DNA of 63,678 bases from Macrostomum lignano (taxonomy: Eukaryota), in NCBI GenBank assembly GCA_002269645.1, contig NIVC01000170.1:1-63678 (forward strand), read 5' to 3'. The notes beneath the pieces were generated by a model. The model did no database searches. It saw only the letters and a list, made by a program, of their open reading frames with translations, and was not told the origin of the DNA. The translations under genes were made by a program, and so were the position numbers. Below, one piece after another: positions 2,616 to 62,938 of this stretch (position 1 is the stretch's first letter; each line of letters opens with the position of its first letter).

Positions 2616-3113
2616 CTTTGGCCATAGACAATTGCCGAGCATGGGTTGAATTTGTGAGCAGTTAAGAGTTCTGGCCATAGACAATTGCCGAGCATGGGTT
2701 GAATTTGCGAGCGGTTAATAGTTCTGGCCATAGACAATTGTCGGAGCATGGGTTGAATTTGCGAGCGGTTAATAGTTCTGGCCATAGACAATTGCCGAGC
2801 ATGGGTTGAATTTGCGAGCGGTTAAGAGTTCTGGCCATAGACAATTGTCGGAGCATGGGTTGAATTTGTGAGCGGTTAAGAGTTTTGGCCATAGACAATT
2901 GTCGGAGCATGGGTTGAATTTGTGAGCGGTTAAGAGTTTTGGCCATAGACAATTGTCGGAGTATGGGTTGAATTTGTGGGCGGTTAAGAGTTCTGGCCAT
3001 AGACGATTTTCGGAGTATGGGTTGAGTTTGCGAGCGGTTAAGAGTTCTGGCCATAGACAATTGTCGGAGTATGGGTTGAGTTTGCGAGCGGTTAAGAGTT
3101 CTGGCCATAGACA
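2616..3113. repeat. 53/54-bp minisatellite (ctggccatagacaattgtcggagcatgggttgaatttgcgagcggttaagagtt), ~9 units
   Basis: Direct reading; 18-aa periodicity in the ORF track. Confidence 0.95.
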
Positions 3114-3664
3114 GCAGGTTATTATTGGCAAAATAAGCATAAAGGATGAGCTCATCAGATTAAATCACCAGTTAGTACCAATTCGAAAAAATATAATATT
3201 TGCTATAACTACGAGTAACATACAGAGAACAAGTTTAAGTTTTCTACTCGACCTACAAGTAAAAATGCCACGACAGATTGAATTCAGGGTCGGTAAATAA
3301 TCGGCAGAAAGAAAATGTTCTCTTTCAACAAACGTGGAAATTAATTACTGGGACCGCTGCCCGACCCTCCCCCCCCGCTGACCCACCCACCTGCAAAAGC
3401 CATTTTTAGCACCACAGGACGGCAGGGAGGACTTAAACTCAAATAATAATGGCTACTGCATATAATAAATATAGCTGAGACTTATGGGGTCCACGGCCGA
3501 TTGAAGTCTACCGCTGTGGGTACATGCATGGCCTTGTTGGAGAGCGGCGCAGCCTGTTCCACTAATTCCGTGAACTGCTTTGATTCTCTCTGTGACCTCT
3601 TTCTCCATTGCTTTTCCTTCTCACTTTTACCTTTGTTCTCCCATATATACTCTTGTACTCTATC

Positions 3665-39916: not shown

Positions 39917-48493
<8,577 letters not shown>

Positions 48494-49064
48494 TGAGCTC
48501 AATCGTTGCAGATTCGGTCCATCAGAATCTGACAGCTGCAATCCGAGCAAACGGTATCTTGAAATTGGTCTCTTTGAGCTGTAGGATCCGACAGATTTGG
48601 AAAACATATCGATAGTTCAATTACAGCAGAACTCACGCATCAAGTATTGAAACGGGGGCCGAGAGAGACAGTCTAGCTAGCGTCCCTGTCGCTTCTCAGA
48701 CCCTTATTATTTTCTGCTCACAGAAAGGCGACTCTCAGCGTGAGGTGCTCAAGGTCCCTAACTCCCCTCTCTACCCCCTCTCTGTCTCTCATTCTGTCAA
48801 GTGGATGACAATCTTTGGGAGTTCTGTGTCCAACTGGAAAGAATTGCTGAAAACCTGCATGCTAGGGAAAGAAGACTTTTTGGTAGGCGACCAGAGCTTT
48901 GCAGACTCTGCACGGGGAGTCTCCATCACTTCTTCTGCGCAAGAGGAAAACAATAAAAGAAAGATGGTTAGAGTGAAGTCTGTCGTATCTTGCAAATCAA
49001 TAAGCTGTCCTTTGCTTGCCAGTAAGATTGCCATGTTAGTAATGTTAGTTGTATTCATTAGTTT

Positions 49065-49765
<701 letters not shown>

Positions 49766-49827
49766 TTCCAATCAACTTGCGTGCTTCACTTTTTACTTAA
49801 TCGTAGTTTTTTAGTTTTGTCAGCAAC

Positions 49828-50850
49828 TCAGCCAGTCTGTCTCAATCGCGCCGCTTTGTTCTCAATATGCCAGGTATAATGTGCATAATTTATGACCTTG
49901 CTAGTAATGCCTGCTTGATACTCTCTCAGCTCATTATGCTGCTTTATTGATAGATACTTCAGTGCACCAGGTGGTGTTGTCCAGTTTTTGGAAAACTTTG
50001 AAAACGCTGTTAAAACCCAAGCACTGTCAATTTTTAATCATACTACTGACAACAGGTAAGTGCAGTATGTAAGTAGTGTGTAAATAAAGTTGTTCATTTT
50101 TTTCCTACAATCATCGTGGTTGCCATTGGCGATGTTTTGGGCGTCAGATTAAATATACGCTCGTACTTTGACTGCCAGGGTTGCGCCACTTCAAGTGTCA
50201 GGGTGGCGCCACTTTGACTGTCAGGGAAGCGCCACTTTGACTGTCAGGGAAGCGCCACTTTGACTGTCAGGGAGGCGGCACTTTGACTGTCAGGGAAGCG
50301 CAACTTTGACTGTCATGGAAGCGCAACTTTGACTGTCAGGGAAGCGCAACTTTGACTGTCAGGGAAGCGCAACTTTGACTGTCAGGGAAGCGCAACTTTG
50401 ACTGTCAGGAAGGCGTCACTTTGACTGTCAGGGAGGCGGCACTTTGACTGTCAGGGAAGCGCCAATTTGACTGTCAGGGAAGCGCCACTTTGACTGTCAC
50501 GGAGGCGCTACTTTGACTGTCAGGGAAGCGCCAATTTGACTGTCAGGGAAGCGCCAATTTGACTGTCAGGGAAGCGCCAATTTGACTGTCAGGGAAGCGC
50601 CACTTTGACTGTCACGGAGGCGCTACTTTGACTGTCAGGGAAGCATCAGTTTGACTGTCAGGGAGGCGCCACTCTGGCAATAGGAAGCTACTAGCGCTGG
50701 AAAACAGAGGATGACCCCCAGCAGCAGCCGTGCGGCTTTGAAGTCAGCCAATTGCTCACTTGCAATCAACTCGTTTTGAGCATCGATTAGCCCAACTCGC
50801 AACAATTTTTCACTTTCTGCCGGACTGCAGGGAGCCGGCCGTTTACTCAT
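49828..50850 (-). CDS. Putative two-exon small protein (89 aa): join(50850..50760, 50006..49828)
   Basis: ATG 50850; donor GCAA|gtgagc (phase 1); acceptor tttaacag|CG (phase 1); second exon open for 58 codons to TGA; the intron holds a minisatellite like the neighbouring genes. No homology recognised. Confidence 0.4.
50170..50665. repeat. 23-bp minisatellite (gcgccactttgactgtcagggaa)
   Basis: Direct reading; contains the TGAC-T-GTCA inverted motif. Confidence 0.93.
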
Positions 50851-50974
50851 CCGGTGGGGTGGGGGGTTGGGGCCGATCGTGGTTTGGAAAAATGAGTTGA
50901 AATTGTTTTGCCCTATGCGCGGTTTTTAGGGCAGTTCCGTTCTGTGTGCAACAGTGGCCGTGGCCTAGTTTGCT

Positions 50975-51938
50975 GTGGACACCCTCAGTGTCTCTGGTGT
51001 GGACACCCTCAGTGTCTCTGGTGTGGATACCATCAGTGTCTCTGGTGTGGACACCCTCAGTGTCTCTGGTGTGGATACCATCAGTGTCTCTGGTGTGGAC
51101 ACCCTCAGTGTCTCTGGTGTGGACACCCTCAGTGTCTCTGGTGTGGACACCATCAGTGTCTCTGGTGTGGACACCCTCAGTGTCTCTGGTGTGGATACCA
51201 TCAGTGTCTCTGGTGTGGACACCCTCAGTGTCTCTGGTGTGGACACCCTCAGTGTCTCTGGTGTGGACACCATCAGTGTCTCTGGTGTGGACACCCTCAG
51301 TGTCTCTGGTGTGGACACCCTCCGTGTCTCTGGTGTGGACACCCTCCGTGTCTCTGGTGTGGACACCCTCAGTGTCTCTGGTGTGGACACCATCAGTGTC
51401 TCTGGTGTGGACACCCTCAGTGTCTCTGGTGTGGACACCATCAGTGTCTCTGGTGTGGACACCCTCAGTGTCTCTGGTGTGAACACCCTCAGTGTCTCTG
51501 GTGTGGACACCCTCAGTGTCTCTGGTGTGGACACCCTCAGTGTCTCTGGTGTGGACACCATCAGTGTCTCTGGTGTGGATACCATCAGTGTCTCTGGTGT
51601 GGACACCCTCAGTGTCTCTGGTGTGGACACCCTCAGTGTCTCTGGTGTGGACACCCTCAGTGTCTCTGGCGTGGACACCCTCAGTGTCTCTGGTGTGGAC
51701 ACCCTCAGTGTCTCTGGTGTGGACACCCTCAGTGTCTCTGGTGTGGACACCATCAGTGTCTCTGGTGTGGACACCCTCAGTGTCTCTGGTGTGGACACCC
51801 TCAGTGTCTCTGGTGTGGACACCCTCAGTGTCTCTGGTGTGGACACCCTCAGTGTCTCTGGTGTGGACACCCTCAGTGTCTCTGGTGTGGGCACCCTCAG
51901 TGTCTCTGGTGTGGGCACCCTCAGTGTCTCTGGTGTGG
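50975..51938. repeat. 24-bp minisatellite (gtggacaccctcagtgtctctggt), ~40 units
   Basis: Direct reading. Confidence 0.97.
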
Positions 51939-52090
51939 TTTATGATATCACCTGCTCTCAGTAGCGGCGGCCAGCGTAATGTGCACCAGCACGCGACCCC
52001 CCCCCCCCCTAATCACGAGTCCAATGCGAGAGCAATAAAACCGAGCTATAATTCCTTTGCAATATCATCTGAGCAATAGATTTAATAGCA

Positions 52091-52511
<421 letters not shown>

Positions 52512-53149
52512 AACTACCTATCTGAAGAGATTCTAACAGAGCCTGAAGAAGGCAAGCCAGCCAAAGCAACAGAACAGAAAGGCTTTTAGCTCCGGGCCAG
52601 ACGGGCTGGTTGGGGGCTGTGCCGAACTCGGACCGCCCCCCAACCCCACCCCCCTAAAAGGTGGCACACAGAGGGGGGCGGCAGAGAAGCAGCTGCGATC
52701 GAAGACGTGCCCCCTGACCCTCGTCCCGGCAACAGCGCTTCAACTCCCAGTGGGGAACCCTAGCTGAGTCGCATACGACTACTCGGCAAAGTTTAAGCAA
52801 GCCATACCATGCATAGTCTCTCCCGCTTAGACAAGCCGGGTTGTCTTCATTGCAGTCTGTTTGACAAATTGCTCGAACGGAGGGAAGAGAGGCAGTGCCG
52901 GTACTTCAGCAGTCCTGACACCGGGGCTGAAATGGGGAAGTCACTTAAACCTACCCAACTGAAGTAGCTGCTTATGGGGCTAAATATTGAATCGCTAGTG
53001 TGTCTCAATATTTATATTGATATCCAGAATGCTGCTCACTTTACTAGTACTTAGCACTGATTGACAGTTGATGGTGCTGAGTCTGCGTGAGCTTAATTTC
53101 GAAGAAGAGAGATTTCTCTTCCTATAGGAAGTTATTGTGTCGAAAGAGA

Positions 53150-53730
53150 GGAGAGAAAAGATGGGAGAGAGGGAGAGAGAGGGAGAGAGGGAGAGAGAGG
53201 GAGAGAGGGAGAGAGGGAGAGAGGGAGAGAGAGGGAGAGAGGGAGAGAGAGGGAGAGAGAGGGAGAGAGGGAGAGAGAGGGAGAGAGGAGAGAGAGGGAG
53301 AGAGGGAGAGAGAGGGAGAGAGGGAGAGAGAGGAAGAGAGGGAGAGAGGGAGAGAGGGAGAGAGAGGGAGAGAGGGAGAGAGAGGGAGAGAGAGGGAGAG
53401 AGGGAGAGAGAGGGAGAGAGGGAGAGAGGAGAGAGAGGGAGAGAGGGAGAGAGAGGGAGAGAGGGAGAGAGAGGGAGAGAGGGAGAGAGAGGGAGAGAGG
53501 GAGAGAGAGGGAGAGAGAGGGAGAGAGAGGGAGAGAGGGAGAGAGAGACAGAGAGAGACAGAGAAAGGAAGAGAGAGGAGAGAGAGAGAGAGAGGGAGAG
53601 AGAGAGAGAGGGAGAGAGAGAGAGGGAGAGAGAGAGAGGGAGAGAGAGGGAGAGAGAGAGACAGAGAGAGACAGAGAGAGACAGAGAAAGGAAGAGAGAG
53701 GGAGAGAGAGAGACAGAGGGAGAGAGAGAC

Positions 53731-53765
<35 letters not shown>
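53150..53765. repeat. (GA)n/(GAGAGAGG)n polypurine tract
   Basis: Direct reading; similar tracts at 54530-55000 and 55355-55510. Confidence 0.95.
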
Positions 53766-53827
53766 GGCACCTCCAATCTCAGGCCCTGACACGGTAGAAA
53801 GGACTGAACAAAGTCAATTTAGTTGGA

Positions 53828-53867
53828 TTGCCGATATTTCGAAATTATTAAATTTCTTCGTCAGAGC
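53828..53867 (-). ncRNA. Minimal type I hammerhead ribozyme, copy B (weakened stem I)
   Basis: Minus strand: GCU CUGACGA A GAAAUU uaau AAUUUC GAA AUAU C GGC; 6-bp stem II; predicted cleavage after C at 53833. Confidence 0.7.
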
Positions 53868-54627
53868 TGTAAGCGAGTAAAATTTATTATGCGTGAATTG
53901 CCGTCAATATATAAAGGCGATATCGCCAGGGAGAGACGATCGATAAATGGGTGTGCTCAAGCACTTAAAACAGTACGCATGGCCAGTACATTAAAACGAG
54001 TCTGAGACTCTGAGAAATGCGGAGGGGGTGGCTAGAACTGTACAAGTGGGCCTAAACGACCTTAAAGTGTAGGAGAACAATTGTAAAATTAAAAGGCATA
54101 ATAAATAGACAAGGTAAATAAAAAGTTAGTAAAAGCTCAGAGCAAAAAATGCAGGTGCACCGTACACAGTGTTTGAAAACCTTAGAATAAAAAAGCAGAG
54201 AAAAAAGAAACAAAAAAACCAATGAAAAAAATCACAGAGGGGAGCACAAAATAACAGTAAAAGACTTTGCACAGGCGTCAGAAAAAGGAATTAGTTGGCA
54301 GGATCCAGCCGGCTATGACAGAGCAGAGTACGGAGGCTCCTCCCCTTGGTGTAGGCGGGCAGCACCGGGGTCTCGCAGTGCCGTATCACCCTGTCCTTCA
54401 CCTTGGCAGCCAGGGCGTCGGAGGTCGCACAGTGCGGCAGGATCAGCGGGATGGCCGGTTTGTGCAGTATGCCGGCAAGTTCGTTGGCGCCGTGTGGAAC
54501 ACGAGTCCTCAGGACCTCGATGAACTTGGCGGGAGAGAGGGAGAGAGAGGGAGAGAGAGGAAGAGAGGGAGAGAGAGGGAGAGAGAGGAAGAGAAGGAGA
54601 GAGAGAGGAGAGAGAGGGAGAGAGAGA

Positions 54628-54679
<52 letters not shown>

Positions 54680-54713
54680 GGAGAGAGGGAGAGAGAGAGA
54701 GGGGGAGAGAGAG

Positions 54714-54747
<34 letters not shown>

Positions 54748-54836
54748 GAGAGAGGGAGAGAGAGAGGGTGAGAGGGAGAGAGAGAGAGAGGGAGAGAGAG
54801 GGAGAGAGAGGAAGAGAAGGAGAGAGAGAGGAGAGA

Positions 54837-54867
<31 letters not shown>

Positions 54868-55066
54868 GGGAGAGAGAGAGAGGGAGACAGAGAGAGAGAG
54901 AGGGAGAGAGGGAGAGAGAGGGAGAGAAGGAGAGAGAGAGAGGGAGAGAGAGAGAGAGGGAGAGAGAGAGAGAGAGAGGGAGAGAGAGAGAGAGAGGAGG
55001 GCGCCTCCAATCTCAGGCACTGACGCGGTACATGTAAAAAGGACAAACAAGTCAAGTTGATTTAAG

Positions 55067-55107
55067 TTGCCGATATTTCGAATTAGGTAAATTCTTCGTC
55101 AGGGCAA
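55067..55107 (-). ncRNA. Minimal type I hammerhead ribozyme, copy A
   Basis: Minus strand: UUGCC CUGACGA A GAAUU uaccu AAUUC GAA AUAU C GGCAA; 5-bp stem I, 5-bp stem II, palindromic AUAU stem III; AUC cleavage triplet (C at 55072). Confidence 0.82.
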
Positions 55108-55844
55108 ATGAAAAGTAGCGACAAGTGGTGTTGTAAAAGTTATTAAATAGGCGGGTTAGAGGGGAGAGAGAGTAGACAGGTAGATAGAGAGCGTACGGTG
55201 TGTACACTTGGTGTGAGTCGATAAAACACTATTAGAGTTGAAAATGCAAAATAAAAAACAGTGCACAAATAAAGTGAACCGCACGTGGGCTGCAGCGATC
55301 CTACACAGGAAATAAATAATGGAGTGGTGCAACTGCACCGGTGTCTAAAAAGGGGAAAGAGAGAGAGAGGGAGAGAGAGAGGGAGAGGGAGAGAGAGGGA
55401 GAGAGGGGGGAGAGAGGGAGAGAGAGAGAGGGAGAGAGGGAGAGAGAGAGAGGGAGAGAGAGAGGGAGAGAGAGAGAGAGGGAGAGAGGGGGGAGAGAGG
55501 GAGAAAGAGGAGAGCTTCACGGTGCATCGAGTTATTCAAACTAATTGACAACCTGTTTCAAGTCTCTGGGTTCTTTTCCAGGTCAGAGAAGATAAAAAGT
55601 AGCTTTCTACTACTACATGTAAGATTTTAAAAGCTAAAAAAATATTATACAAAACTTAGCAGTTTCTTAATTAGTTATCTAACAAAAATGCAGATTATTA
55701 ACACCACCGGCTGTTAAAAAGCCAATCCATGAGAAGAAGATAAGAAATCACTTGGCAGTTTCCTAAAATAATCACTGCTGTGTATAAATAGACAAGATTT
55801 CACTTACACTGCAGATTATAACAAATCTGTACTGCTGGGGTGGC

Positions 55845-56500
55845 GAGAGAGTGAGATTGAGAGTGAGAGGGAGATTGAGAAGGAGGGTGAGAGGGAGGGT
55901 GAGAGGGAGGGTGAGAGGGAGGGTGAGAGGGAGGGTGAGAAGGATAAGAAGGATGGTGAGAGGGAGGATGAGAAGGAGGGTGAGAAGGATGAGAAGGAGG
56001 GTGAGAGGGAGGATGAGAAGGGGTGAGAGGGAGGGTGAGAGGGAGGGTGAGAAGGTGGGTGAGAGGGAGGGTGAGAGGGAGGGTGAGAGGGAGGATGAGA
56101 AGGGGTGAGAGGGAGGGTGAGAGGGAGGGTGAGAAGGGGGGTGAGAAGGATGAGAAGGAGGGTGAGAGGGAGGATGAGAAGGGGTGAGAGGGAGGGTGAG
56201 AGGGAGGGTGAGAAGGTGGGTGAGAGGGAGGGTGAGAGGGAGGGTGAGAGGGAGGATGAGAAGGGGGTGAGAGGGAGGGTGAGAGGGAGGGTGAGAAGGG
56301 GGGTGAGAGGGAGGGTGAGAAGGAGGGTGAGAGGGAGGATGAGAAGGGGGTGAGAGGGAGGTTGAGAGGGAGGGTGAGAAGGATGAGAAGGAGTGTGCGA
56401 GGGAGGATGAGAAGGGGGTGAGAGGGAGGGTGAGAGGGAGGGTGGGTGAGACGGAGGGTGAGAGGGAGGGTGAGAGGGAGGGTGAGAGGGAGAGTGATGG
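55845..56500 (+). repeat. 12-bp G-rich minisatellite (gagggagggtga)
   Basis: Direct reading. Confidence 0.92.
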
Positions 56501-57244
56501 TAGATAAGAGAGGGGACTTAGCTGCAGGGCTGTCCCGGAGGGGACACAGCGGGAAGGCGCGGGCGCCCATTCCGCTAAATAAGAGAGGGGAAGTTTAGGC
56601 CAGAAAGTGATGAGGCAGATATTGAACGCCTAAATGTACGTGGAAGCACTGAAAAAGTACAATATTGTGCAAAAGGGCATCGCACATCTTAATAAAGTGA
56701 TATATGACTTTCTGAAGCCAGCCTGTGTGTAGCAATTGTTGAATTTTATTCCACGTCAACCCCTACAGCGAATATGCTGCCATAAAAAGTCCATAAACAA
56801 TGCATGAAAATTCTACACAGATCATGACAGCAAAATGCCTCACGGCGCCCTCACATTAGCACTTTAGAGACATTGATTTTTACAGAATTGCAATTTTTTT
56901 GTTGATTTTCGAATTTAATCAAATTAATTCGCGATAAGGGAGAGGAAAAGATCCAACAACAAGATTAGAGATATAAAAATGAATTTCGGAAAAATACCAG
57001 TCCAGACGCGTGGACTTAGAAATCCTTGAACTCCGGGGTTTAGGAAGCTCAGAAGCTGCGGCATTGGCTGGTTGCGGCCAAATGTTGTTGAATTCCCATT
57101 TTAAAACTGAGAGACTGAGCACTCGCCAGACTAAACTGCGTTCCCAATTTCACCGATTGAAGAGAAAAGTATTGGATTGGAATTGGTGAGACAAATTTTT
57201 TAATGTTTTTATGTAAGTGAACCATGAATTTGAAATTAGTACGG

Positions 57245-57605
57245 TTCTGGCGCCATTCGTATAATGATACTGGCGCCATTTAGACATTGGTTCTAGCGCC
57301 ATTTGGATACTGGTTCTGGTGTCATTTTGATCCGGGTTCTGGCGCCATTTAGGTCACAGTTCTTGCGCCATTTAGGTCACAGTTCTGGCGCCATTTTAGA
57401 TCACAGTTCTGGCGCCATTTAGGTCACAGTTCTGGCGCCATTAAGATGTGGGTTCTGGCGCCATTTAGATATGGGTTCTGGCGCCATTAAGATGATGTGG
57501 GTTCTGGCGCCATGTAGATATGGGTTCTGGCGCCATTTAGATATGGGTTCTGGCGCCAATAAGATGTGGGTTCTGGCGCCATTTAGATATAGTTTCTGGT
57601 GCCAT
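57245..57605. repeat. ~22-bp degenerate minisatellite (ggttctggcgccatttagatat)
   Basis: Direct reading. Confidence 0.85.
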
Positions 57606-57940
57606 TTGTTTGCTTATATTGGATTGCAATGTCCTAATCAAATAATGAATGAAAATGGACTCATGAAATGATGAAGTGATAAAACCTGGCTTTTCTTTAT
57701 ATAACGAATGCCAAAATGTAGTCGGGATGCGGGATACAGGACTAGAGTGAGTAGCTCGCTTTGAAATACTTAGCTAACTTACTCTGAGATCTTCATGACA
57801 GCTTCTCCCTGTGGGACTGAAGGACCAGCAGCTGCTCAGCGTGACCCAAATATTTTGGTGAAACTCGCTACCATGGGGCTGTCGGATTCAGTTGCGTTAC
57901 AGTTGACTTGAAGCTGGTCTGATTAGGATGCACTGGAACT

Positions 57941-59030
<1,090 letters not shown>

Positions 59031-60029
59031 ACAGATCAGCTAAGAAGCTGGGGGCACTAGGACATTAAGATGCTATGACAGACAGACAGAAAAGAGAAAA
59101 AATGCAGCTGTTGCTGGGCGGATGAAAAAAAACTGATACCGAGAGTTGCTAAACAGCCTCCTCCTTCTAGCGACTTTTTGGCAGCAGAGCCCCCGCATTA
59201 ATTTATTCCACAGTAAACTGGGATTCTATTTTCGACAGACGGGTCCCATTGATTTCGGGCAGTCAATTTGCCTCTCTGCCCCGCGAGGTTGCCGAACAAA
59301 AAAAACACAGCAAGCTGCCTTCAGTCCCCGCGGCTATCATTGCAGCTTCCCAATTTTGCAAGATCAACAAACCAACCGGACCAGGTGGCTCTGACTGACA
59401 ACTTCACTATTTTTTAATCGCCACTATTTTTTCCGTAGGGGGAATCGAGGGACAACTCGGCTTTGCCCAAGCAGGCTTAGCAAGAGTGGTTTATGGCATA
59501 ATTGTGTGGTATAATTCCGTTATATGGGGTTTGTGGTGGGTATACGAGTTGATGATAGTCCGCCTATCGGGGTCTCCCCCTTAGGGGGAGTTTTTGGCTA
59601 GTCATATATACTAAAAAAAGCAATGCTAATTCAATGCGTCACAGCAGACTACGGCATTATTAAACAGCGGAAACATTTTAGCGCTTAACGCTAACTCTGT
59701 ATTCAAGACTGTGTTGTTAAGCAAATATTGCATATATAAGTTAGTGACTTTGAGATGGAGACAGAGCGACCATGGAGACAGGGGTCCGCTTTTAATTATC
59801 TGCGCGGTGGCCAACTGGGGAGATTTTTCTGGGATTTTGCCCACCGTTGCTCGGTAAGTCTCCACCTCGGTGACTCTGGCTTCGATTCTGGAATTATTTC
59901 TGGTAGGCGTGTTTGGAATAATTATTAGGGCTCCAAGCCGAGAAGAACGAGCTCCGAGTGCCTCTGTGTGCGATTGTAAACAGAGCAGACTCAAGCAGGC
60001 ACAAAGAAGCGGGCTGAGCGTGTACTTTA

Positions 60030-60327
60030 CTGACCGACTGACTGACTGACTGACTGACTGACTGACTGACTTGAGTGAGTGGGTGACTGACTGACTGACT
60101 GACTGACTGACTGACTGACTGACTGACTGACTGACTGACTGACTGACTGACTTGAGTGAGTGGGTGACTGACTGACTTGAGTGAGTGGGTGACTGACTGA
60201 CTGACTGACTGACTGACTGACTGACTGACTGACTGACTGACTGACTGACTGACTGACTGACTGACTGACTGACTGACTGACTGACTGACTGACTGACTGA
60301 CTGACTGACTGACTGACTGACTGACTG
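60030..60327. repeat. (GACT)n microsatellite
   Basis: Direct reading. Confidence 0.95.
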
Positions 60328-60654
60328 CAACTTGATTAAAACTTAAATGAGTATTCAACTCTCTGGGCAGTTAATCACGTTTCTGCCATTTAATTTTTTC
60401 TCTTCATTTCTGCATCCCAGTTGTTTATTAAGCCTTCAGTCACGATTTAGCAGTGAAAGGAAAAGTCCGTGTTTAGGCAACAATCACGTTTTATTTCCAA
60501 CGGCGCCTGGAAAAAACAAAAATTCTCATCAATTTTAAACTGCAATAATTTGACAATCATAATCGCAATTAATTCTGCGATTCGTGACCGACCAATTGGA
60601 TTAACAGATAGAATTTCGCTTTTTACAATTTACTGAATTTTTATCACTCGACCG

Positions 60655-60772
60655 GCAAATGGGTCTTCAAGGATGTGACTGGGCCATCAAGGATGTGACT
60701 GGGTCATCAAGAATGTGACTGGGCCATCAAGGATGTGACTGGGCCATCAAGGATGTGACTGGGTCATCAAGG
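60655..60772. repeat. 20-bp minisatellite (ggatgtgactgggtcatcaa), left flank of the LINE; resumes at 62936-62995
   Basis: The same unit family occurs on both sides of the element. Confidence 0.9.
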
Positions 60773-62938
60773 ACTCCTGAAGTAAGATGATGCCCGGTTT
60801 TGCGAAGTTGGCCAACCTGAATCAAGTTGGTCGAAGCCGCGATGCAGCGGTGCAGGTTCAGCTGCAGGATGTCCACTCCCGGAATTTCACGGGTGGTCCG
60901 TGCAGCTTCCTGCTTGCTCAGGGCGAATTTTGCAGGAGAGCTGCCTCTTTCGCCTCGCCGATGGCTCCAGGCTCCAGTTCCATGGGCTCCTCCCGGATAG
61001 TTTCCATGGTCGAGGGCGGGGCTGCCACAGGGCGGCATTCGTACTCTCGGCCCAGTTTTCCGGGTGGGCCGCAGTGGTGATACTGTGCTGAGGGTTGCTG
61101 CGGTTTTTGAGCCTTTGGCGGTGTCCCAGCAGCTGCGGTTTCCGGCCCTTTCCACGTCCGCCTGTTGCTGCAGCTTTCGCGGCTTTCCCTCTGACAGGGT
61201 CCATGTCCTCGGAGGGGTCGTGACGACCGGGAGCTTCTTTTCCTGGGCGAACCCCGCTCGCCTGCTTACGCTTCTCCGGGGCGGTGGACGGGTGGCGTCA
61301 GACTCAAAGCTAAAGAACTGAATCTGCATCAGCCCGACAGAGATGAGGGACATGTCCGGATAGCGGAGCATCCAGCTATCTGACAGTCCGAGGATTGCCG
61401 TGAAACCGTCTCCGCCCAGCTTGGAGATGGTCTCGTGAACTACGACGCCATTTGCCGGCAGGTCCGGATTTGGTTGCCAGCAGCAGGCGGCGCAGCTCGT
61501 CGGCGTTGGTGATGGCGCTGCGAGCCGGAATCCAGCACGGTGCCGGTGTGTCCGGGGTCGCTCGTCCTCCCTGTATATAAATAGGTTTCCCAGTTCTGCA
61601 CCCGAGTCGAAGGCTTTCAGCGTCTCAAGGAGCTGCTGCCCAGACTGGCTGTCGGTGGGCTGGATGTGGAGGGCCTGGTCCTCGACATTCGTCTTCAGGA
61701 CTTGAATGACGGTGCCGCTCAAGGCAATCCTGACCAGGTGGGAGTCCAACCTGCGCCAGATTTGGTCGAGCCGTTTGACCGAGAGAGGCGTCTCCTGGCC
61801 TTGAATGATCAGGGCCGGCTGCCTCTTGGCCATAGCCGCATAGGTGCGCCTCGGCTTAGTGGTTTGGCCAGCACCCAACGTTTTGTATCCATCTGCAGCC
61901 GTGGGAGTTTCCACACGAGCAGAGGTCCCGCCGCGGGAGGGGCCAGCCGCACCAGAAGCTTTGGCGGCACCGACGCTTCCGGCCGACGCGCGGGGTCCGC
62001 CCCTTTGTCGGATGTCGGTCCCTCCGCGGCGGGATTCCCAGAGTTTCCGGCCCCTCCTCAGAGGCGGCAGATGAGGCGGCTATCGCACTCCTCCGTTCCT
62101 CCTCTTTGCGCTGGCGGAAAGCTTGGTAACGAGCGATGCTACGGGCCTTCCGCTTAGAGATCGGGGGCCCGCTGCCCTGTTTTCCAGCCACTTCGGTATT
62201 GTCCTGAGTGGCAGCAGGGTTGTTCGGCTGAGAGGCATCGGAAGTTCCGGTGCTGCAAATGTCCGGTTGAGCGGTACCAACCGGTTGCCGTTCCAGCAGC
62301 ATCAAGGGACGCGTTGGAAGTAGTAGAATACTCCATGAGTCGCTGAAAAGCAGGTTGGGATTAGAGGTAATTAGAGGTGCTGGGCCGTAACCCCAAACCC
62401 AACAGCCAGCCAAAAGAATAGCGACCAGGGGTGGCTTAAGCGCTTACTGGCCCGACCGCTGGCAACGAGAAACTCCTCGGCTAAGAGCCCGGCTTGGAGA
62501 GAACAGAGGCCGAACCAAAGGTCCATCAGCGCGGTACTACACTTGGCCCTTGAGAGAGACAAAAAAGGCTGTCTCTGGAGCCTGCGGACTGGCCGCATAC
62601 CCTGATAAGGTCAGAGGGTGATACCTGTTCCTCAGAGCCGTGGCTAGAGGTACCTGATATGCACAGGTTCACTTTCGGGCAGAGCCCGTACCCAAAGCGG
62701 CCAAGACAGAAGCCGAGGCCACGGATGGGTTGCCGCCGCTGGAGCCCAGTCAGTCCAGCAGCCCTAGAGCTGCCTTGAACACATGCAGGACGTGAACCCC
62801 TGGGTCAGCTTGTGAGTCAGCTTGGAGAGTTCCTGCACCAGAATAGAGGGGGTGCAGGTGTGTAGTATCGCAGACCTTATCTCGTAAGCCTAGTCTGTCT
62901 CATGCTACACAGGCGTGCCGAGCTCACCATTGCATGCG
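60771..62938 (-). mobile_element. Decayed non-LTR retrotransposon (APE-type LINE; R1/I-group-like): 5' UTR, frameshifted ORF1, first ~35 codons of the APE endonuclease; 3' part missing
   Basis: ORF1 from ATG 62336 with frameshifts, containing an (A)WIP...ELRRLLL..NPDL...GLMQIQF segment; then ILQLNLHRCIAASTNL and, in a shifted frame, KPGIILLQES (APE N-terminal QxN and LxQE motifs). Confidence 0.8.

What the first reader, a model, noticed from the sequence alone, without database searches (positions are those of the whole stretch)
53828..55107. Tandem pair of minimal hammerhead ribozymes defining a ~1.24-kb retrozyme-like unit
Both copies have the full catalytic core (CUGANGA, GAAA, AUC triplet) with an extra A between A9 and G10.1, a variant tolerated in natural hammerheads. 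Stem II differs between copies (GAAUU/AAUUC versus GAAAUU/AAUUUC) yet pairs perfectly in both, a compensatory change. Stem III is only the palindrome AUAU, the hallmark of PLE-type minimal ribozymes thought to act as dimers, and here two copies share one transcript. Double cleavage (after 55072 and after 53833) would release a 1239-nt RNA holding a (CU)n tract and a PLE fragment, which could circularise. Both are on the same strand as the neighbouring genes, so they could also cut read-through transcripts.
Basis: partly seen in the sequence, partly recalled or inferred. Interest (0 to 1): 0.8.

Follow-up and report, generated by a model that had tools for sequence, protein, structure and literature searches.

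The report
Two Penelope-element hammerhead ribozyme remnants
The two small hammerhead ribozyme motifs are real, but they are the ordinary minimal ribozymes at the 3' ends of two truncated Penelope-like retrotransposon copies sitting in a (GA)n microsatellite, not a dedicated circular-RNA unit.

Summary
Both motifs exist exactly where stated, on the minus strand. Cleavage would follow C 53833 and C 55072, 1239 nt apart. Each has an intact core, CUGACGA-A-[helix II]-GAAAUAUC. A full structural descriptor finds these two sites and none in 300 shuffles. Rfam finds nothing.

They match the published minimal hammerhead of Penelope-like elements (PLEs). They have the extra base between A9 and G10.1, the G10.1-C11.1 pair, a palindromic AUAU in place of helix III, and a short helix I.

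A covariance model built only from 18 hammerheads on metagenome contigs, two of them 3' of RT+GIY-YIG ORFs, recovers both window copies. They score 45.7 and 37.1 bits; the next best hit scores 12.2. Helix II covaries across the set.

The internal ORF piece (54530..54294) is the last 79 codons of a PLE ORF, 90-96% identical to public proteins. A related 79%-identical hit is labelled Macrostomum lignano.

The copies share only about 115 nt, from the CUGA box through a 70-75 nt tail that ends at (CT)n. Nothing upstream aligns. The locus is therefore two 5'-truncated PLE-derived 3' ends, head to tail in one microsatellite array. It is not a retrozyme monomer repeat. Cleavage and circularisation are untested.

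The parts
55346..55514 (.). (GA)n-rich microsatellite array bordering copy B on its 5' side (minus-strand sense)
   Evidence: TRF array 55358-55514; sequence read
55111..55345 (-). 5' part of copy B: about 235 nt, non-coding, not alignable to copy A; identity unassigned (diverged 3' UTR, or the body of a non-autonomous element)
   Evidence: No significant local alignment with the region upstream of HHR1; no PLE protein match; no Rfam match at E<=10
55064..55110 (-). HHR2, a minimal type I hammerhead. Helix I is 55107..55103 with 55071..55067 (UUGCC/GGCAA). Core CUGACGA is 55102..55096, and the extra A is 55095. Helix II is 55094..55090 with 55084..55080. GAAAUAUC is 55079..55072, with predicted cleavage after C 55072.
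   Evidence: 45.7 bits and E 1.9e-10 with model R2, which was built without the window copies
54997..55071 (-). Tail of copy B (75 nt), ending in the hairpin GGAGG-CGC-CCUCC that abuts (CU)n
   Evidence: Alignment with the tail of copy A; fold
54531..54996 (.). (GA)n / (CT)n microsatellite array between the two copies
   Evidence: TRF array 54533-54996
54291..54530 (-). Last 79 codons plus the stop codon of a PLE RT-EN ORF: the end of the GIY-YIG domain (AKFIEVLRTRVPHGANE) and a roughly 60-aa C-terminal extension. It is truncated at its 5' end exactly at the (CT)n border.
   Evidence: phmmer hits P0197 (90% identity, E 2.3e-38) and P0198 (96%); tblastn alignment starts at 54530; P0197 is colinear with the RT+GIY-YIG ORF of L071
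53873..54290 (-). 3' UTR (pseudo-LTR equivalent) of copy A, about 420 nt and U-rich
   Evidence: Stop-to-hammerhead distance is 426 nt here, against about 370 nt in L042/L071 and 339 nt in L121
53825..53872 (-). HHR1, a minimal type I hammerhead. Helix I is only 3 bp, 53867..53865 with 53832..53830. Core CUGACGA is 53864..53858, and the extra A is 53857. Helix II is 53856..53851 with 53846..53841. GAAAUAUC is 53840..53833, with predicted cleavage after C 53833.
   Evidence: 37.1 bits and E 5.1e-08 with model R2
53762..53832 (-). Tail of copy A (71 nt), ending in the hairpin GGAGG-UGC-CCUCC that abuts (CU)n
53145..53761 (.). (GA)n-rich array (GGGAGAGA-type units) 3' of copy A, the presumed insertion target
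   Evidence: TRF arrays 53145-53767

Best explanation
The locus holds two old, 5'-truncated copies of the 3' end of Penelope-like retrotransposons (PLEs) or PLE-dependent elements. They lie head to tail on the minus strand inside one long (GA)n/(CT)n microsatellite array.

Copy A (54530..53762) keeps four parts: the last 79 codons of the RT-endonuclease ORF, about 420 nt of 3' UTR, the element's minimal hammerhead, and a 71-nt tail. Copy B (55345..54997) keeps about 235 nt of unassigned sequence, the hammerhead, and a 75-nt tail.

The hammerheads are the standard minimal PLE type. In an active element, the transcript of tandem or pseudo-LTR copies is thought to be cut after C17. Helix III would form between two copies through the AUAU palindrome, or the element's own protein would assist. 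This cutting would define unit-length RNA.

Shown here: the motif, its family membership, its covariation, the PLE coding fragment and the architecture. Inferred: the insertion history and any present-day cleavage. HHR2 looks intact. HHR1 has a weakened helix I.
For: Motif:
- Both cores are intact and beyond chance.
- The features listed as emergent for PLE min-HHRs are all present: a base between positions 9 and 10.1, the G10.1-C11.1 pair, palindromic 15.2-16.2, a short helix I and a long helix II (PMC4209133).

Independent relatives:
- A pattern scan of metagenome contigs gave about 20 sites with the same core and helix I but different helix II sequences. About 100 other hits had no helices.
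- Two of the good sites lie about 370 nt 3' of ORFs with RVT_1 and GIY-YIG domains.
- Model R2, built from those 18 sites only, scores the window copies at 45.7 and 37.1 bits, against 12.2 for the next hit.
- Pair counts: 94.6-95.7% of cells are paired, against 36-51% when partners are slid. Four of the 6 helix II pairs show double changes, and adding L121 gives 2 such pairs in helix I.

Coding fragment:
- It matches P0197 (90% identity, E 2e-38) and P0198 (96%).
- P0197 is colinear with a PLE ORF over the RT (E 6e-16) and the GIY-YIG domain (E 7e-6), ending in the motif where the window fragment starts.
- tblastn shows the match begins at the (CT)n border, and there is no other PLE coding piece in the window.

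Same architecture elsewhere:
- L121 has ORF stop, 339 nt, hammerhead, tail, then a (TCAG/TCAT)n array.
- The other family ends in (TA)n at a fixed distance after the hammerhead.
- The literature reports hammerheads near PLE 3' ends, 30-40 bp tails and an insertion bias for microsatellites (PMC8557442).
Against: - Copy B has no PLE coding sequence, and its upstream 235 nt does not align with copy A. Its origin from an autonomous PLE is therefore not shown.
- The tails here (71-75 nt) are longer than the 30-40 bp reported.
- Target-site duplications cannot be read inside a microsatellite, so two insertions cannot be told apart from one complex event.
- No genome-wide copies of this exact family could be collected, and the source organism is only inferred.
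- No expression or cleavage data exist. Published PLE min-HHRs cleave poorly in vitro or only with the element's protein (PMC11167929).
Confidence: 0.8

Rival explanations
1. One reading: the pair is a functional retrozyme-like unit. A minus-strand transcript would be cut at both sites, with the two ribozymes pairing through AUAU. The 1239-nt product would be ligated into a circular RNA that serves as a mobile or regulatory RNA.
For: - Two same-strand hammerheads with intact cores.
- The dimer requirement of min-HHRs is met in principle by two copies on one transcript.
- HHR2's 5' helix I strand can pair with either copy's GGCAA.
- A 2026 preprint argues that animal retrozymes derive from PLE pseudo-LTRs.
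Against: - Only about 115 of the 1239 nt is repeated, and the copies are about 18% diverged.
- The interval is mostly microsatellite plus a truncated ORF end.
- No other copy of the unit occurs in the window.
- Metazoan retrozymes are 150-450-bp tandem monomers with canonical loop-loop hammerheads (PMC7229834).
- HHR1's helix I is only 3 bp.
- Cofolding does not predict the AUAU helix.
- Min-HHRs have low activity in vitro.
Confidence: 0.08
2. Copy B is not a truncated PLE. It is a short (about 350-nt) non-autonomous element that borrows only the PLE 3' module (hammerhead + tail) for mobilisation, as SINEs borrow LINE tails. Copy A is the truncated autonomous partner.
For: - Homology between A and B starts sharply at the CUGA box and covers only the hammerhead + tail.
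- B is bounded by (GA)n on both sides and has no coding remnant.
- B keeps the family-typical UCAUUUGCC helix I strand.
- The preprint on PLE-derived non-autonomous retrozymes makes this plausible.
Against: - There is only a single copy of B's 5' part in the window, and none could be sought genome-wide.
- No tRNA, 5S or 7SL-like head was found.
- AT-rich UTRs can diverge beyond alignment, so a diverged PLE subfamily explains the same facts.
Confidence: 0.25
3. It is one complex PLE insertion (upstream pseudo-LTR, body, downstream pseudo-LTR) whose ORF was later almost entirely deleted and replaced by microsatellite expansion.
For: - Head-to-tail hammerhead-bearing repeats flanking an ORF remnant is the canonical PLE layout.
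Against: - Both tails switch to (CT)n at the same base. In a true partial tandem the upstream copy should run on into the 5' UTR and ORF.
- Pseudo-LTRs from one event should align upstream of the hammerhead, and these do not.
Confidence: 0.12
4. The motifs are chance look-alikes of the hammerhead core within AT-rich repeat sequence.
For: - The bare core pattern is expected about 1.8 times per window.
- Rfam reports nothing.
Against: - The full descriptor gives 0 hits in 300 shuffles.
- An independent covariance model scores both copies far above background.
- Helices covary across families.
- The motifs sit at a fixed position 3' of PLE ORFs.
Confidence: 0.01

Closest known systems
Minimal hammerheads (min-HHRs) of metazoan Penelope-like elements, e.g. 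Schistosoma mansoni Cercyon (Cervera & de la Pena 2014, PMC4209133)
   Same: - Type I topology, with no helix III beyond a palindrome.
- Unpaired base between A9 and G10.1.
- G10.1-C11.1 pair, short helix I and long helix II.
- Located 3' of the RT-EN ORF.
- The host here is probably also a flatworm.
   Different: - Helix II is 5-6 bp here, against 7-8 bp in the main Schistosoma family.
- The window copies belong to a different PLE lineage, one with a roughly 60-aa extension after the GIY-YIG domain.
- They abut (CT)n.
Poseidon PAc element of Anolis carolinensis (PMC11167929)
   Same: - A hammerhead sits at the pseudo-LTR/ORF junction.
- Genomic copies end in a defined tail a short way past the hammerhead.
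   Different: - In PAc the ORF start overlaps helix II, and cleavage needs the PAc protein.
- Neither could be examined here, because no full-length copy is available.
Metazoan non-LTR retrozymes (PMC7229834; preprint 10.64898/2026.07.22.740005)
   Same: - Same-strand type I hammerheads that could release an RNA with ligatable ends.
- A proposed evolutionary link to PLE pseudo-LTRs.
   Different: - Retrozymes are 150-450-bp monomers in tandem arrays with canonical hammerheads and loop-loop contacts.
- Here the spacing is 1239 nt, only 115 nt is shared, and the ribozymes are minimal.
Microsatellite-targeting PLEs such as Neptune and Naiad at (TA)n (PMC8557442), and the telomere-attached Athena/Coprina elements with a hammerhead next to reverse-complement telomeric repeats
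   Same: - The element's 3' end lies next to a simple repeat.
- The hammerhead lies close to that end.
   Different: - The repeat here is (CT)n/(GA)n.
- Whether it is a target preference or templated sequence was not resolved.

Membership tests
Hammerhead ribozyme (type I) | Conserved core C3-U4-G5-A6-N7-G8-A9, G12-A13-A14, A15.1-U16.1, and H17 not G | tested here: met
   Both copies read CUGACGA ... GAAAUAUC, with C at position 17
Hammerhead ribozyme (type I) | Three helices around the core within one molecule | tested here: not met
   Helices I and II form. Helix III is only the palindrome AUAU with no loop, so it can form only between two copies.
Hammerhead ribozyme (type I) | Match to the curated Rfam hammerhead models | tested here: not met
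   No match at gathering score or at E<=10 over 53000-56000
Hammerhead ribozyme (type I) | Site-specific self-cleavage after H17 | not testable with these tools
   Needs in vitro transcription or RNA end mapping
PLE minimal hammerhead (min-HHR) | Extra unpaired base between A9 and G10.1, with a conserved G10.1-C11.1 pair | tested here: met
   An A at 53857 and at 55095, with the G-C closing pair in both. Criteria come from PMC4209133.
PLE minimal hammerhead (min-HHR) | Palindromic 15.2-16.2 with no loop 3 | tested here: met
   AUAU in both copies
PLE minimal hammerhead (min-HHR) | Short helix I (4-5 bp) and a longer than usual helix II | tested here: inconclusive
   HHR2 has 5 bp and 5 bp. HHR1 has helix I of 3 bp (with a G-U pair) and helix II of 6 bp.
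PLE minimal hammerhead (min-HHR) | Recognised by a structure profile built from hammerheads next to PLE ORFs, with covarying helices | tested here: met
   Model R2 scores 45.7 and 37.1 bits, against 12.2 for the next hit. Covariation. PLE ORFs next to seed members.
PLE minimal hammerhead (min-HHR) | Position in the pseudo-LTR, 3' of the RT-EN ORF | tested here: met
   HHR1 lies 426 nt 3' of the stop of a PLE ORF remnant. For HHR2 no ORF remnant is left, so this is met for HHR1 only.
Penelope-like element (EN+), intact copy | ORF with a reverse transcriptase and a GIY-YIG endonuclease | tested here: not met
   Only aa 831-908 of the P0197-type ORF is present. There is no RT piece anywhere in the window. 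These are truncated remnants.
Metazoan non-LTR retrozyme | Tandem array of near-identical 150-450-bp monomers, each with a hammerhead | tested here: not met
   Spacing is 1239 nt, only about 115 nt is shared at 82% identity, and no further copies occur. Definition from PMC7229834.
Metazoan non-LTR retrozyme | Canonical type I hammerhead with a closed helix III and loop 1-loop 2 contacts | tested here: not met
   Minimal motif with no loop 1 and no helix III hairpin
Metazoan non-LTR retrozyme | Expression as circular RNA | not testable with these tools
   No transcriptome data are available

The most novel reading that the evidence does not exclude
The conserved 3' module has three parts: the hammerhead, a roughly 70-nt tail, and a terminal hairpin GGAGG-YGC-CCUCC that runs into (CU)n. 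This module could be the mobilisation signal of a flatworm PLE lineage. The lineage would integrate specifically into (GA)n/(CT)n microsatellites by annealing its (CU)n-ended RNA to the nicked target, much as telomere-attaching PLEs use reverse-complement telomeric repeats. The module would also be shared with a short non-autonomous partner (copy B), making copy B a PLE-driven SINE or proto-retrozyme.
Probability: 0.15. Interest if true: 0.45.

Novelty: new member of a known kind. Interest (0 to 1): 0.25.

Why it matters
- Minimal PLE hammerheads occur in thousands of copies in many animal genomes, so one more pair is not surprising.
- The case shows that these ribozymes are invisible to Rfam. 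They can be recovered with a small family-specific covariance model.
- A natural head-to-tail pair with one intact and one weakened helix I gives a ready construct for testing the dimer model. Macrostomum, if that is the host, is a transformable flatworm.
- The shared hammerhead+tail module next to (CT)n hints at how this lineage selects its targets and how non-autonomous derivatives may arise.

Tried and rejected
- **Rfam:** nothing at gathering score or at E<=10. The only hit was a spurious lncRNA match in the CT tract.
- **Bare core pattern:** not above chance by itself.
- **Word-indexed homology search with the 79-aa fragment:** nothing found.
- **Pfam on the fragment:** nothing found.
- **Profile of 80 PLE ORFs related to L071, plus a profile of the GIY-YIG end motif:** neither detected the fragment. 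Direct BLASTP against L071 gave only E 0.03-7.7. Taken alone, these would have wrongly dismissed the 'PLE fragment'. The exhaustive phmmer search settled it.
- **Homology upstream of the two hammerheads:** none.
- **Dimer cofolding:** predicts domain-swapped helices I and II but not the AUAU helix, so it is uninformative.
- **Organism identification by an alpha-spectrin exon:** best hits were only about 50% identical.
- **Exact look-up of the ASC channel ORF:** no record.
- **Literature search for Macrostomum plus Penelope:** nothing specific.
- **Chance origin and an intact PLE:** both considered and rejected.

Full report
**Observation**

The region was read directly. On the minus strand, 53864..53833 reads CUGACGA-A-GAAAUU-UAAU-AAUUUC-GAAAUAUC. 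On the same strand, 55102..55072 reads CUGACGA-A-GAAUU-UACCU-AAUUC-GAAAUAUC.

Helix I is UUGCC/GGCAA (5 bp) for the upstream copy, HHR2. For HHR1 it is only GCU/GGC (3 bp, one of them a G-U pair). The minimum-free-energy fold of each about 54-nt segment gives helix I plus helix II with the core unpaired.

The bare core pattern is not informative: 2 hits against 1.79 expected. I therefore wrote a full descriptor. It requires an optional extra base, the G10.1-C11.1 pair, helix II of at least 4 bp, a palindromic helix III, H17 not G, and helix I of at least 3 bp. It finds exactly these two sites in the window and none in 300 dinucleotide-preserving shuffles.

Rfam finds nothing, either at gathering scores over the whole window or at E<=10 over 53-56 kb.

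**Context**

The window is animal DNA.
- Alpha-spectrin exons lie on the minus strand from 11.1 to 32.2 kb.
- An ASC/DEG-ENaC-type ORF lies on the plus strand at 38.0-39.7 kb.
- EF-hand and LRR ORFs lie on the minus strand at about 40-42.7 kb.
- The stretch from 48 to 60 kb is dense with micro- and minisatellites.

The hammerheads sit inside a (GA)n-rich array that three TRF blocks describe: 53145-53767, 54533-54996 and 55358-55514.

**What the two copies share**

A self-BLAST and a MAFFT alignment show homology over only about 115 nt, at 82% identity. On the minus strand it begins at the CUGA box and runs through the ribozyme and a 71-75-nt tail. It ends at the same base in both copies...GAUUGGAGGYGCCCUCC, where (CU)n begins.

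Upstream of the CUGA box nothing aligns. The local alignment score is reached by 79 of 300 shuffles. No third copy exists in the window.

**Comparison with the literature**

Cervera and de la Pena (PMC4209133) defined minimal hammerheads in the pseudo-LTRs of Penelope-like elements. They list features that emerged beyond their search descriptor:
- a conserved base between positions 9 and 10.1;
- the G10.1-C11.1 pair;
- palindromic 15.2-16.2;
- a short helix I (4-5 bp);
- a long helix II.

Every one of these is present here, except that helix I of HHR1 is shorter.

The same paper reports no activity for single motifs and low activity for dimers. A later study of the Anolis Poseidon element found cleavage only in the presence of the element's protein (PMC11167929).

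**Independent relatives**

A scan of metagenome contigs with CTGACGA N{10,26} CGAAATATCGGC returned 120 stretches. About 100 of them are unrelated sequences with essentially no helix II or helix I. About 20 have the same extra A, the same helix I (UUGCC/GGCAA) and well-paired but different helix II sequences: GUCUUU/AAAGAC, GUGUAU/AUACAC and GUGUUU/AAACAC.

Two of these sites (L042, L071) lie about 370 nt downstream of ORFs of 949 and 1006 aa. [quoted passage not shown]

On an alignment of 20 sites, 95.7% of cells are paired, against 36-51% when partners are slid. Four of the six helix II pairs show changes on both sides.

A covariance model built from the 18 metagenome sites alone scores the window copies at 45.7 and 37.1 bits (E 2e-10 and 5e-8). 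The next best hit in the window scores 12.2 bits. One caveat applies: the core and the GGC of helix I were fixed by the search pattern. Only helix II, the 5' strand of helix I, and its outer pairs are independent evidence.

**The internal coding piece**

The minus-strand ORF end at 54530..54294 (79 codons plus a stop) had no Pfam hit. It found nothing in the word-indexed protein search, and a profile of L071-type PLE ORFs did not detect it.

The exhaustive phmmer search did find relatives:

| Hit | Length | Identity to fragment | E-value | Note |
|---|---|---|---|---|
| P0197 | 977 aa | 90% (its aa 831-908) | 2e-38 | colinear with a PLE ORF |
| P0198 | 520 aa | 96% | 5.9e-38 | |
| P0199 | 746 aa | 79% | 3.2e-18 | UniRef label Macrostomum lignano |
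| P0200 | 231 aa | 47% | 6.6e-16 | from a metagenome contig |

P0197 is colinear with the L071 PLE ORF across the RT (E 6e-16 and 7e-10) and across the GIY-YIG domain (E 7e-6). That last alignment ends in ...EAKLIEVLRTRIPHGAN, the motif at which the window fragment begins.

tblastn shows the window match starts exactly at the (CT)n border at 54530. No other piece of this ORF occurs anywhere in the window.

So copy A is a 5'-truncated PLE. It consists of the last 79 codons, a stop at 54293..54291, 426 nt of UTR, the hammerhead and the tail.

**The same architecture in a relative**

The contig encoding P0200 (L121) carries a decayed PLE of the same lineage. Its ORF stops at 3081. A hammerhead at 3413-3458 reads AAAGCC-CUGAAGA-A-GGAUUGAAAGAUCC-GAAAUAU-U-GGCUUU (31.7 bits). 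It is followed by a tail of roughly 80-100 nt and then a (TCAG/TCAT)n array.

Its helix I (AAAGCC/GGCUUU) differs from UUGCC/GGCAA by compensatory changes. Adding it raises the count of pairs with double changes to 6 of 11.

In the other family, several copies end in (TA)n at a fixed distance after the ribozyme.

Craig et al. (PMC8557442) describe hammerheads near PLE 3' ends, short tails, inverted and tandem truncated copies, and a strong insertion bias for microsatellites.

**Interpretation**

The most economical reading is two 5'-truncated PLE-derived 3' ends, head to tail, in one (GA)n array. Copy A is demonstrably from an autonomous element.

Copy B (55345..54997) has the family-typical helix I and an intact ribozyme, but no coding remnant and no alignable UTR. 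It is either a diverged or more deeply truncated copy, or a short non-autonomous element that shares only the 3' module. I cannot decide between these without genome-wide copies.

A single pseudo-LTR-body-pseudo-LTR insertion is less likely, for two reasons. Both tails give way to (CT)n at the same base, and the upstream regions do not align.

A retrozyme is not supported. Metazoan retrozymes are tandem 150-450-bp monomers with canonical hammerheads (PMC7229834). Here only 115 of 1239 nt is repeated and the ribozymes are minimal.

**Function**

In active PLEs the hammerhead is thought to cut multimeric or pseudo-LTR transcripts. This has not been shown in vivo, and it is dispensable for insertion in vitro.

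In this locus a minus-strand read-through transcript could in principle bring the two AUAU palindromes together. In a domain-swapped dimer, HHR2's good 5' helix I strand could serve either GGCAA substrate strand.

Energy models do not predict the 4-bp A-U helix, and HHR1's own helix I is degraded. Cleavage, release of a 1239-nt RNA and circularisation remain untested possibilities. I consider them unlikely to matter biologically.

**Verdict**

This is a correct observation of a known kind of element. The 'retrozyme-like unit' reading should be replaced by 'two truncated Penelope-like element ends with their minimal hammerheads'.

Noticed in passing
window 53762-53784 and 54997-55019 (minus strand): Both tails end in a predicted hairpin, GAGA..GGAGG-YGC-CCUCC..UCUC. 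Its 3' arm is the first bases of the (CU)n tract, and the only difference between the copies lies in the loop. The fold z-scores are not significant.
   Followed up: partly
window 53900-53913 (minus strand, about 40 nt 5' of HHR1): TATATATTGACGGC resembles the conserved TATATATTGTAACGGC found about 30-40 nt 5' of the hammerhead in the metagenome PLE family. Only 3 of 1000 shuffles score as well. It may be a shared pseudo-LTR signal or a coincidence.
   Followed up: partly
L001 2191-2241 and 2370-2420 (minus strand): Two hammerheads of the metagenome family lie in direct tandem only 179 nt apart. This spacing is in the retrozyme size range.
   Followed up: no
L003 2429-2530; L104 1216-1308; L072 2295-2387: Head-to-head inverted pairs of hammerheads almost touch each other. 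This matches the inverted 5'-truncated copies described for PLE insertions.
   Followed up: no
window 48000-60400: Unusually dense run of different tandem arrays:
- a 34-mer at 48000-48375
- (TTAG)n at 49058-49767
- a 23-mer at 50165-50673
- a 24-mer at 50974-51938
- (ATCT)n at 52091-52523
- a 12-mer GAGGGTGAGAGG at 55847-56497
- a 23-mer at 57243-57607
- (GACA)n at 57942-59035
- (ACTG)n at 60029-60327
   Followed up: no
window 60730-62079 (minus strand): A 450-aa open reading frame with no Pfam match. It is the nearest long minus-strand ORF 5' of the hammerheads, and its nature is unknown.
   Followed up: no
public proteins P0197, P0199, P0203: These database proteins look like chimeric gene models that fuse PLE ORF pieces to host domains: NT-C2, aldo/keto reductase, and BTB-Kelch/glycosyltransferase. 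They look like annotation artefacts in a repeat-rich genome.
   Followed up: partly
window 11117-32252 (minus strand): The alpha-spectrin exons are only about 50% identical to the best database hits. The source lineage is therefore poorly represented among the proteins that were scored.
   Followed up: no
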